Shown here one piece after another: positions 24,274 to 27,215 of a DNA stretch of 64,000 bases. The notes under the pieces are model-generated. The model was not told the origin of the DNA. It worked only from the letters and a program-made list of their open reading frames with translations, and did no database searches. Every line of letters starts with the position of its first letter. Position 1 is the stretch's first letter. Position numbers and translations under genes: made by a program. The stretch covers positions 186,001 through 250,000 of the forward strand of contig NW_020843568.1 in assembly GCF_003704095.1 (NCBI RefSeq), in the 5' to 3' direction. This DNA comes from Pocillopora damicornis. Lineage: Eukaryota.

Positions 24274-27215
24274 ATGGGCACAATTCCGGTCTGGGTTATA
24301 GTTTTCGTATTCGCATCTTTTACACACGAGGGTGAGTATTAAGTTATGATAACTAAAGTTTAAAATTACGGATATCTCTCTTCAATAATATGCCTTATTT
24401 CACTGAAGTATCTCTCCAGTGTGATCATGGCGGCTTCTGAGCATTAAAAAATTAAAAATACGCCGTATATTTTTACCCTCCTAACTCTAAAAATCAGGTT
24501 CTAGTATCTTGCTGACACTAAAAAGAATGAGAGGTGTTTTGTTTAGCTTTTAACTTGATTTCTAGATAAAGTCGATACAAGGAAAAAAACCATTATAGTA
24601 AAAAAAGCGTTCGGTCATGGCACTAATATTTTTATATTTGAAACGGTTGGAAGTATAATTTGAACGTAAAATTAAGATTGAGAAAAGGGGAAGACATGGA
24701 AGATATGTCTCAATGTAAGGACGTTCTTTTTTTTTTATTTAGCACGTGGTCGAGGTTGTCCTATGACCTTAACAGCCATGGGCTGTTATAGAGACTATAG
24801 AGGAATGAGAGTTCTTCCAAATCTCATCATGAACCAACGTGGCATAGATGGCTTCTGGGCAAACTATACAAGTGTGCTTCCCAGGTAATTGCAACAACTT
24901 GAGTTAAGTAAGCTTCATTTCTCTCAGATGGTGAAGTACAAAGAAATTTTGAGCAGTAAAGCTATCTTCAGTTGGTAAAAATGATATGAATTATTTTAAC
25001 GATTATTAAGCTGAGAATTTCTCGAGGTAGTCACATGTCACTTATGTTTCAAAGTGATAATACCTCTTTTATGTATCCTGGCAACAATGCAATACTTCCA
25101 GAGAGTGCCCCATTAAAGTTCACTTTGAAAGTGGGCTCCATTTGGGCGTGTACTTTAGGACAATGAAACAGGAAGTCGGGCATTTTTATTCACAGGCAAA
25201 ATCTTGAATGCATTGGGAGAGTACAATATTTTTCAGTCAATTTAGTTAATCAGCGGTACTATGTCTCGGACAACTGTGCAAGTCCTGTAATAGTTGAAAA
25301 ACATATATATTTTCGATTCCTCGTGGGAAGGAAGAATTTTAGAATTTTTTCTTCGTATGCCGCTTATGACAAGGTGGAAAGCATTTTTTAATTTTATGAC
25401 AGAGCTCAAATGTTACCATATCTCGTTTTGTATTTTCCCCTTTGAGAGTGAGTAAGCCTCAATTCCTAATGAAGACTTCCTTTGTCCCACTCTCGTGACC
25501 AGTCGAAAAAGCATTAGTCTCTAAATGCACAGTTGTTGTTTATTTTGCTAAGTGATTGGGACCCTAGTTTCTTATACTCGTTCGTATGTTCGTTTGCTTT
25601 TTTTGTTTGGTTAAACCTGTTGTTTTTATTTTCTATTTTTGTTATTAGTTTAATTTGTAGTTGTGCGACAAAAGCCAAAGAGATGGGCTACAAGTACATT
25701 GGAATTCAATATTATGGAGAATGCTGGGCAGGAGACTACTTTGCTCGTCCGCTTAAAGAGAAAAGAAGTTGTATAGACTTAAAATTCCGAACGTGTCAAA
25801 AGATGGGCCCTTACAGGATATGCAGTGGAAAGGAATGGACAAACTTCATTTATGGATTACAAGAAGTAAGTGTGACTGAAAGAGAAGCCACGAACTTTCA
25901 ATGTGGGAAATGGATTAATAAACAGTGTGATTGTTATTTTTAGTATAAGACGTACAGAATTCACACTTGCGTAGAAAAGATGACACCCGAGAGCAAGTGA
26001 TGGCACTGTTGTAGCTATTGAGTGTCGAAACTAACGCGGGTTTGCTTTGGTTTTACTTAGCTTTGCTCTGTGATTGGTCAAGAAGACTACCGCCATCTTC
26101 TCTACCAATCAGATGCAAAACTAAAAACAATCGCGACTAGATTATTTGCGTTTTCTCGCGCTTCAAATAGTTTGCTTGCTCTGAGTACTTATTGGCTACT
26201 GATAGTCTAAACCTTAATTCTGATAGGTCACTGGCATTATATTGGTTTTGGTTTTTTTCCACGCTCAATTTAAAACTGCTCAATTATGATATGCACGTGA
26301 TTAAACCATCCAACTTATTATTTACAGATGATTTAGTGTTAACAACTAAGTTGAAAACGTAAATTGGCCACCGTAAAGAGTTGAAAGGCTGACGTTTCGA
26401 GCGTTAGCCCTTCGTAAGAGCGTTAGCCCTTCGTCAGAGCGTTAGCCCTTCGTCAGAGCGTTAGCCCTTCGTCAGAGCGTTAGCCCTTCGTAAGAGCGTT
26501 AGCCCTTCGTAAGAGCGTTAGCCCTTCGTAAGAGCGTTAGCCCTTCGTCAGAGCGTTAGCCCTTCGTAAGAGCGTTAGCCCTTCGTCAATCGCTCTGACG
26601 AAGGGCTAACGCTCGAAACGTCAGCCTTTAAACTCTTTATGGTGGCCAATTTACGTTTTCAACTCAGTTGTTAACACTAAATTACCTGTTATACTCTCCC
26701 AACGACGCAGCAACACAGTTTCTTAAGAAACTTACCCCGTTTGATTATTTAAAGAGTCGGATGTTTATCACGGGGAGTTGGTAATTAACAGGGATGTTCT
26801 TGTTTTGGTTTATGCTTTATTATTCAGTTTCTCCCTCCTTTAATTGACTTCTAACCAATATTGGTATTTGCTGCTTCATTTTTTTGTCATGGCTGTGTCA
26901 TCCAAGCCTACCGCAGCAGAGCCAGTTCCGACTAAAGCAGTCACAGCTAAACCAACAACAGAGGCAACTACGAGCAAACCAGTTACAACTCAGCCAATAA
27001 CAGCTGTATCAACAGCTAGGCCAACTCAAGCAAATAGAACCATAAGTAAGGAATTATTTATTTCACCATGCACAGAAAAGCGATTTTCATTTTCTTCAAC
27101 GAGCACACTCACTTCCTCCATACCAGTCATATGCAGTTATACACGAATGAATCCATGCTGAAATTTACGCATACGCGACGGAAAAGTTAGTAGCGAATTA
27201 GAAAATACCCTTGAA

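What the first reader, a model, noticed from the sequence alone, without database searches (positions are those of the whole stretch)
26399..26588. Telomerase-like repeat array built from a hammerhead ribozyme core
Seen: the 19-bp unit is exactly the 5' half of the hammerhead (minus strand CGCTC-TGACGAAGGGCTAA). The unexpanded sister copy (27340-27363) shows one unit bracketed by a 5-nt direct repeat (GAGCG...GAGCG), the geometry of a telomerase template with an alignment region. The 10 copies sit exactly at the fold-back junction, in the inverted arm. Known: Penelope-like element reverse transcriptases are the sister group of TERT. Inference: the RT may have copied, realigned and recopied this 24-nt segment during insertion, i.e. 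repeat-addition synthesis on its own ribozyme. Later DNA slippage is the competing explanation; the interleaved C/A variants (A,C,C,C,A,A,A,C,A,C) may favour it or reflect a recurrent misincorporation.
Basis: partly seen in the sequence, partly recalled or inferred. Interest (0 to 1): 0.85.

Follow-up and report, generated by a model that had tools for sequence, protein, structure and literature searches.

The report
Minisatellite at a Penelope retrotransposon fold-back junction
The ten 19-bp repeats are real and come from the hammerhead-like motif of a truncated head-to-head Penelope-like retrotransposon insertion, but they look like a stepwise-grown minisatellite seeded by the palindrome, not a telomerase-style product of the element's reverse transcriptase.

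Summary
There are 10.0 units of 19 bp at 26399-26588, with the stated A/C variant order. They sit at the centre of a 415-bp fold-back insertion flanked by a 12-bp target-site duplication.

The insert is a head-to-head double copy of the last ~160 nt of a canonical Penelope-like element (RT plus C-terminal GIY-YIG ORF). That stretch carries the family's minimal hammerhead-like motif. The genome holds about 2,435 copies of this core.

Arrays of two or more units occur at only 10 loci, with 2-5 units outside this window. All 10 are in fold-backs, about equally in short arms (4) and long arms (5).

The variant that marks 5 of the 10 units here is absent from about 30 units in the other arrays. It is sporadic elsewhere (5 single copies). 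Its interleaving needs at least 6 separate duplications of array units, which one fixed template cannot produce.

In 8 of 10 arrays the expanded arm lacks its own 5-nt bracket. The bracketed template lies on the opposite arm. This argues against both simple slippage and RT realignment on RNA as the seed, and points to a palindrome-mediated strand switch.

Telomerase-like synthesis is not supported. Read-level and allele tests could not be run. A follow-up on other DNA of this genome (s1-762920) had already classed this fold-back family as an ordinary truncated Penelope insertion.

The parts
26317..26328 (.). Left target-site duplication, ATTATTTACAGA
   Evidence: Read. It matches 26744-26755 at 11 of 12 positions. 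Other family copies have 12-16 bp duplications.
26329..26398 (-). Short inverted arm, family positions about 97 down to 27, including GAAAC and the would-be cleavage site GTC|AGC
   Evidence: Inverted repeat I3 and direct repeat D2. It differs from the long arm at 5 of 75 positions.
26399..26588 (-). Array of 10.0 units of 19 bp (sense unit TGACGAAGGGCTAACGCTC; 5 units carry TTACGA)
26589..26595 (+). 7-nt asymmetric centre ATCGCTC, belonging to the long arm (family positions 1-7)
   Evidence: The same centre appears in many fold-backs of the family.
26596..26743 (+). Long arm (family positions 8 to about 155) with a single unit. The hammerhead-like motif C3..C17 spans 26595-26622. The arm ends in the family tail CTTACCCC.
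   Evidence: (150-nt arm, thousands of candidates) and the alignments of the 3' ends.
26744..26755 (.). Right target-site duplication, ATTATTTAAAGA
27199..27473 (.). Unexpanded sister fold-back. 15-bp duplications at 27199-27213 and 27459-27473. The long arm is on the minus strand, from the left duplication up to the centre. The 96-nt arms at 27263-27358 and 27365-27460 are 100% complementary, with centre GAGCGA at 27359-27364.
   Evidence: D4, I2.

Best explanation
The array is a minisatellite that arose in genomic DNA after a truncated Penelope-like element (PLE) inserted as a head-to-head fold-back. The insert consists of two inverted copies of the element's 3'-terminal ~160 nt, each beginning at the minimal hammerhead-like motif and joined around the 7-nt centre ATCGCTC. 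Inferred seed: a strand being synthesised outward from the centre ends in CGCTC. That end can pair with the GAGCG just behind it on the same strand, which is the complement of the centre and belongs to the other arm. It then recopies the 19-nt unit. This template switch is specific to palindromes. Once two units exist, ordinary replication slippage or unequal sister exchange changes the number stepwise. A G-to-T change in one unit was carried along into five units. Shown: the anatomy, the family, the distribution of arrays and the multi-step history. Inferred: the strand-switch seed and its timing after insertion.
For: The family is a PLE. An ORF adjoining the arm has GIY-YIG, and an 86%-identical ORF has RVT_1 followed by GIY-YIG. 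The arm also occurs upstream in direct orientation, as a pseudo-LTR.

Head-to-head inverted copies are a published PLE feature (PMC8557442). A purified PLE protein cleaves and extends both target strands (PMC11167929).

There are 2,435 core copies but arrays at only 10 loci. All 10 are in fold-backs, although only about 63-73% of cores lie in fold-backs (p about 0.01-0.04).

In 8 of 10 arrays the unit run is preceded by GAGCG(AT), so that arm has no bracket of its own. Such arms make up about a third of cores (p about 0.006-0.013).

TTACGA occurs in 5 of 10 units here, in 0 of about 30 units in other arrays, and in only 5 other single copies genome-wide. The observed order needs at least 6 block duplications after one mutation.

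The array has no private substitutions in 190 nt, while the flanking arms differ at 5 of 75 positions. The arms of array loci are 78-95% identical, and none exceeds 95%. By contrast, 19 of 26 sampled fold-backs without arrays exceed 95%.
Against: The timing of the first duplication is not resolved. The same strand-switch geometry would work for the PLE RT copying cDNA at insertion.

The age comparison uses samples that are not matched. With about 1% of fold-backs carrying arrays, only 1-2 arrays would be expected among the youngest fold-backs.

The argument from array homogeneity is marginal (Poisson p about 0.02-0.1).

No read or allele data could be obtained, so the unit number and variant order rest on one assembly.
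Confidence: 0.6

Rival explanations
1. RT-seeded, DNA-grown. At insertion the PLE reverse transcriptase crossed the head-to-head junction and was copying the other cDNA. It slipped between the two GAGCG repeats and made the first few units. Later DNA slippage expanded and shuffled them.
For: The array arm usually lacks its own bracket, while the opposite arm's strand has it. This fits synthesis templated across the junction. PLE proteins extend both strands and start at internal sites, so unusual strand transfers occur at insertion. The array is an exact integral number of units with no microhomology at its edges.
Against: No array was found in any fold-back whose arms are more than 95% identical. 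The frequency is very low, at 10 of roughly a thousand fold-backs. Host polymerases can make the same switch at palindromes. Nothing in the sequence identifies the enzyme.
Confidence: 0.22
2. One reading: the whole array was made in one event by telomerase-like repeat addition. The RT copied RNA positions 26 to 3, realigned the cDNA end GAGCG on the internal CGCUC, and recopied.
For: The RNA would carry a 14-nt segment bracketed by CGCUC. PLE RTs are the sister group of TERT (abstract of PMC8557442). The array lies where a cDNA 3' end would be.
Against: One fixed template cannot spread a private variant to 5 interleaved units, since at least 6 duplications of array units are needed. cDNAs of solo, internal and bracket-bearing arms must cross the bracket, yet they carry 0, 0 and 2 of the 10 arrays. 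Arrays sit in either arm. The array does not end in the predicted extra GAGCG(AT).
Confidence: 0.04
3. Assembly artefact: the locus has an array, but the unit number or the variant order is wrong because a near-perfect 190-bp repeat inside a palindrome was assembled from short reads or from two alleles.
For: PLE tandem and inverted structures are reported to cause problems in short-read assemblies (PMC8557442). The genome is fragmented into 4,393 contigs.
Against: Nine other loci carry arrays of the same unit in the same place, so the phenomenon is real. Collapsing of repeats usually lowers the unit number rather than raising it. There are no N runs nearby.
Confidence: 0.12

Closest known systems
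Penelope-like element insertions with an adjacent inverted truncated copy (Arkhipova 2006; Craig et al. 2021, PMC8557442)
   Same: RT plus C-terminal GIY-YIG ORF. The terminal repeat (pseudo-LTR) carries a hammerhead motif. There is a variable 3' tail, a target-site duplication, head-to-head inverted copies and thousands of truncated copies.
   Different: Here both arms are cut down to 160 nt or less, and most junctions fall at one fixed point (family position 1/8). A 19-bp minisatellite has grown in one arm at the junction.
Minimal hammerhead ribozymes of metazoan PLEs (Cervera and de la Pena 2014, PMC4209133)
   Same: CUGANGA and GAAA boxes, an unpaired nucleotide 5' of stem II, a short helix I, a one-pair helix III within a palindrome (ACGU) implying action as a dimer, and frequent pairs on opposite strands.
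   Different: Not detected by Rfam models. As a monomer, the predicted fold pairs CUGACG with CGUCAG. Cleavage is untested.
Minisatellites with interspersed variant repeats, including those derived from transposable elements
   Same: A 19-bp unit, variable copy number between loci (2-10), variant units interleaved in a way that needs repeated duplications, and homogeneity greater than that of the flanks.
   Different: The seed duplication lacks flanking microhomology in its own arm and seems to depend on the neighbouring palindrome. Length polymorphism between alleles is not shown.
Telomerase repeat-addition processivity
   Same: In the element's RNA a short template is flanked by a repeated alignment sequence, and the product is a tandem array of template length at a position corresponding to a cDNA end.
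   Different: The units are not all copies of one template. Arrays are rare and absent where the RT must cross the template. There is no biochemical evidence.

Membership tests
Penelope-like element (canonical EN+) | A single ORF with a reverse transcriptase followed by a C-terminal GIY-YIG endonuclease | tested here: met
   L085:3356-4651 has RVT_1 (E 1.1e-6) and then GIY-YIG (E 2.6e-3). L058:1287-2075, which directly adjoins the arm, has GIY-YIG (E 3.1e-4). All of these scores lie just under Pfam's cut-offs.
Penelope-like element (canonical EN+) | Pseudo-LTRs, a 3' tail, inverted truncated copies and target-site duplications | tested here: met
   The arm is present upstream and downstream in direct orientation in L075. 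The tail is variable and duplications are 12-16 bp. Upstream inverted copies are seen.
Hammerhead ribozyme (PLE minimal type I) | Conserved core C3 U4 G5 A6 N7 G8 A9, G12 A13 A14, A15.1-U16.1 and H17 | tested here: met
   By inspection of 26595-26622, all core positions are present, with one extra A after A9, as described for PLE motifs (PMC4209133).
Hammerhead ribozyme (PLE minimal type I) | Helices I and II and a palindromic helix III; recognition by covariance models | tested here: inconclusive
   Helix II has 4 bp (GGGC/GCUC), helix I only 3 bp (GCU/AGC), and helix III lies in the palindrome ACGU. There is no Rfam hit at E up to 1. In a control on two other PLE hammerhead motifs of this genome, one reached only 25 bits against a threshold of 52 and the other did not match. 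The minimum-energy fold is a plain hairpin.
Hammerhead ribozyme (PLE minimal type I) | Self-cleavage | not testable with these tools
   This needs in vitro transcription of monomer and dimer constructs.
Telomerase-like repeat addition | Every repeat is copied from one internal template, so variants are template-determined | tested here: not met
   A private variant occurs in 5 interleaved units, needing at least 6 duplications of array units.
Telomerase-like repeat addition | Arrays recur wherever the RT crosses the template and alignment region | tested here: not met
   Arrays occur at 10 of 2,435 cores, with none in solo or internal copies and 2 in bracket-bearing arms.
Telomerase-like repeat addition | A ladder of template-length products in vitro | not testable with these tools
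   No biochemical assay is available here.
Minisatellite | A tandem unit of 10-100 bp with interspersed variant repeats and stepwise history | tested here: met
Minisatellite | Length polymorphism between alleles or individuals | not testable with these tools

The most novel reading that the evidence does not exclude
The Penelope-like RT, while finishing a head-to-head double insertion, copies the partner cDNA across the junction. There it can slip between two 5-nt GAGCG repeats and add whole 19-nt units. This would be a rudimentary repeat-addition activity in the sister lineage of telomerase, seen here as the seed of the junction arrays.
Probability: 0.15. Interest if true: 0.7.

Novelty: new member of a known kind. 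Interest (0 to 1): 0.3.

Why it matters
As it stands, this is a transposon-derived minisatellite next to the first exon of a VWA-domain gene, which is an ordinary kind of sequence. Its value is mechanistic. The arrays occur only at head-to-head junctions and mostly in the arm that lacks its own direct repeat. That marks a strand switch across the palindrome and gives a sequence-level handle on how PLE double insertions are joined, a step that is still undefined in the literature. If very young insertions were found to carry arrays, it would point to repeat addition by a telomerase relative.

Tried and rejected
- **Reads:** There is no test of assembly or alleles.
- **Genome sampling:** The baseline therefore rests on 20 random plus 29 top-hit loci, together with the coordinate pairs.
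- **Rfam:** The region gave only chance hairpin hits (a flavivirus CRE and miRNA precursors) that reflect the palindrome, and no hammerhead.
- **Other GIY-YIG loci:** The seven Pfam GIY-YIG loci are other PLE families with no DNA similarity to this one.
- **L084:** This locus was mostly masked N and was left alone.
- **Self-BLAST:** Two scripts for arm identity returned nothing, because a palindrome aligns to itself as one block. They were replaced by anchored alignment.
- **Two-RNA model:** Two template RNAs differing at the variant base were considered. This was rejected because the variant exists only as 5 scattered single copies.
- **Snap-back model:** A pure snap-back origin of fold-backs was considered. 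It was rejected as the general model because the arm starting at position 8 is often the longer arm.
- **Consensus:** No consensus of the element was built.

Full report
**Observation**

Tandem Repeats Finder reports a 19-bp period, 9.9 copies, 97% matches and score 348 at 26399-26586. Read directly, the periodicity covers 26399-26588, which is exactly 10.0 units. It does not continue for a single base on either side. The unit occurs 13 times in the window against 0.01 expected. Five units read TGACGA and five read TTACGA in the sense orientation. The sister copy at 27340-27363 has one unit bracketed by GAGCG.

One detail differs. In the expanded copy the tenth unit is followed by ATCGCTC (26589-26595), not by a second GAGCG. 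The array arm itself is therefore not bracketed. The bracketed 24-mer lies on the other arm (26591-26614).

**Anatomy of the locus**

- The insertion spans 26329-26743 and is flanked by a 12-bp target-site duplication with 11 of 12 positions matching (26317-26328 and 26744-26755).
- It has a short inverted arm (26329-26398), the array, a 7-nt centre, and a long arm (26596-26743) that runs to the family's 3' tail.
- The second fold-back at 27214-27458 has a 15-bp duplication. Its 96-nt arms are 100% complementary around a 6-nt centre.

**What the family is**

The 150-nt arm has thousands of candidate matches in the 234-Mb genome. The 30-nt core occurs 2,435 times with up to 2 mismatches. Copies fall into three classes:
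- a solo arm with a target-site duplication;
- a fold-back of a full arm plus an inverted partial arm;
- an arm preceded by conserved sequence.

That conserved upstream sequence is the 3' part of an ORF with a zinc-finger-like CxxC motif and a GIY-YIG domain (L058:1287-2075). An 86%-identical ORF elsewhere carries RVT_1 followed by GIY-YIG (L085). The arm starts 155 nt after the stop codon. It also occurs upstream in direct orientation (L075), so it behaves as a pseudo-LTR. This is a canonical endonuclease-positive Penelope-like element (PLE).

The literature describes the same architecture. Craig et al. 2021 report high 5' truncation, pseudo-LTRs, a tail, and often an inverted truncated copy adjacent at the 5' end (PMC8557442). 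Cervera and de la Pena 2014 describe minimal hammerheads in the pseudo-LTRs with an unpaired base 5' of stem II, a short helix I and a palindromic helix III, frequently as pairs on opposite strands (PMC4209133). Frangieh et al. 2024 show that a purified PLE protein cleaves and extends both target strands and starts reverse transcription at two internal RNA sites. They also show that hammerhead cleavage is not needed for insertion (PMC11167929). An earlier follow-up on another window of this genome reached the same family assignment (s1-762920).

**Hammerhead identity**

By inspection, 26595-26622 has every conserved core nucleotide plus one extra A after A9. It has a 4-bp helix II, a 3-bp helix I and the palindrome ACGU at helix III. 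Rfam does not detect it. As a control, I scanned two other PLE hammerhead motifs of this genome. One, in L068, reaches only 25 bits against a threshold of 52; the other, in L072, does not match at all. As a monomer, the predicted fold simply pairs CUGACG with CGUCAG. I therefore treat it as a PLE-type minimal hammerhead motif whose activity is untested.

**Census of arrays**

A whole-genome pattern search for two adjacent units, allowing up to 2 mismatches, finds 10 loci.

| Locus | Units | Arm carrying the array |
|---|---|---|
| This window (C203) | 10 | short |
| C2019 | 5 | short |
| C55 | 4 | short |
| C352 | 4 | long |
| C4207 | about 3.7 | long |
| C1420 | 3 | long |
| C436 | 3 | long |
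| C1098 | about 3 | ambiguous |
| C3240 | 2 | short |
| C3669 | 2 | long |

- All ten arrays are in fold-backs. From the first 100 exact cores (13 opposite-strand pairs) and 20 sampled singles (10 fold-back, 5 solo, 4 internal, 1 complex), about 63-73% of cores lie in fold-backs. Ten of ten therefore gives p of about 0.01-0.04.
- Four arrays are in the short arm and five in the long arm, with one ambiguous.
- C1420 and C436 share the same three units with the same derived changes but have unrelated flanks. That array was inherited through a fold-back source element, so the two loci are not independent.

**Which arm carries the array**

In 8 of 10 arrays the run of units is immediately preceded by GAGCG(AT). 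That sequence is the complement of the centre and belongs to the other arm. These eight are this window, C352, C2019, C1420, C436, C3240, C3669 and, starting mid-unit, C4207. The expanded arm in these loci has no upstream CGCTC of its own. Only C55 and C1098 have CGCTC before the first unit.

Arms of the bracket-less type make up about a third of cores. The excess has p of about 0.006, or 0.013 if C1420 and C436 are counted once. Two conclusions follow.
- Simple slippage between the 5-nt direct repeats in duplex DNA should act in solo, internal and bracket-bearing arms. Those hold 0, 0 and 2 arrays.

Neither prediction fits. What does fit is a strand switch across the palindrome. A strand growing outward from the centre ends in CGCTC. 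It pairs with the GAGCG just behind it on the same strand or on the partner cDNA, and recopies the unit. This yields whole units directly after GAGCGAT, as observed. This step is inferred. The sequence does not say whether the polymerase was the RT at insertion or a host polymerase later.

**Growth of the array**

- The TTACGA variant is in 5 of the 10 units here, in 0 of about 30 units in the other arrays, and otherwise occurs as only 5 scattered single copies in the genome. It is therefore neither a mechanism-inherent misincorporation nor a second template.
- A backward search shows that, with one mutation, the observed order needs at least 6 separate block duplications. Array units themselves were copied repeatedly. 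A fixed telomerase-like template cannot do that.
- The array has no private substitution in 190 nt, including 20 CpG sites, whereas the flanking arm segments differ at 5 of 75 positions, at least three of them private changes. This is weak evidence (Poisson p of about 0.02-0.1) that the array is younger than the insertion or is being homogenised.
- All array loci with measurable arms have 78-95% arm identity. In contrast, 19 of 26 sampled fold-backs without arrays exceed 95%, twelve of them at 100%. The samples are not matched, and few arrays would be expected among the youngest copies in any case, so this is suggestive only.

**Verdict**

The array is a real, locus-specific minisatellite. It derives from the hammerhead-like motif at the head-to-head junction of a truncated PLE double insertion. 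The palindrome probably seeded it, and stepwise DNA-level duplication grew it. Telomerase-like synthesis of the array is not supported. An RT-made seed of one or a few units cannot be excluded.

The unit number and variant order rest on a single assembly.

Noticed in passing
window 26589-26738 and 27216-27365: The long arms of the two fold-backs are themselves inverted repeats of each other (150 nt, 93%). They flank a 477-bp stretch holding what looks like the first coding exon (ATG at 26889) of the VWA-domain gene, whose next exon starts near 27590. The exon reading is by eye only.
   Followed up: no
L046 (C1420) and L050 (C436): Two fold-backs with unrelated flanks share a 3-unit array with identical derived changes. 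This implies that a fold-back, centre and array included, was itself transcribed and re-inserted with different 5' truncations.
   Followed up: partly
family arms: The outer ends of the shorter arms cluster near family positions 41, 57 and 98-108. The sequence at about 96-106 (AAATTACCTGC) resembles the true 3' end (AACTTACCCCT). This is reminiscent of the two internal RT start sites reported for a lizard PLE.
   Followed up: no
L009, L011, L015, L028, L076: Some junctions hold short palindromic fillers (for example TAGATCTA) or extend symmetrically into the 3' UTR by up to about 70 nt. The join is therefore not always at position 1/8.
   Followed up: partly
window 26589-26640 and 27322-27364: As a monomer, the motif is predicted to fold into a plain hairpin in which CUGACG pairs with CGUCAG, masking the catalytic core. 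This is consistent with a dimer-only or inactive ribozyme.
   Followed up: partly
L068 1014-1084 and 2934-3006: Another GIY-YIG PLE copy has (TGTA)n/(TA)n microsatellites nearby, scored by Rfam as false miRNA hits. This may reflect the microsatellite insertion bias described for some PLEs.
   Followed up: no
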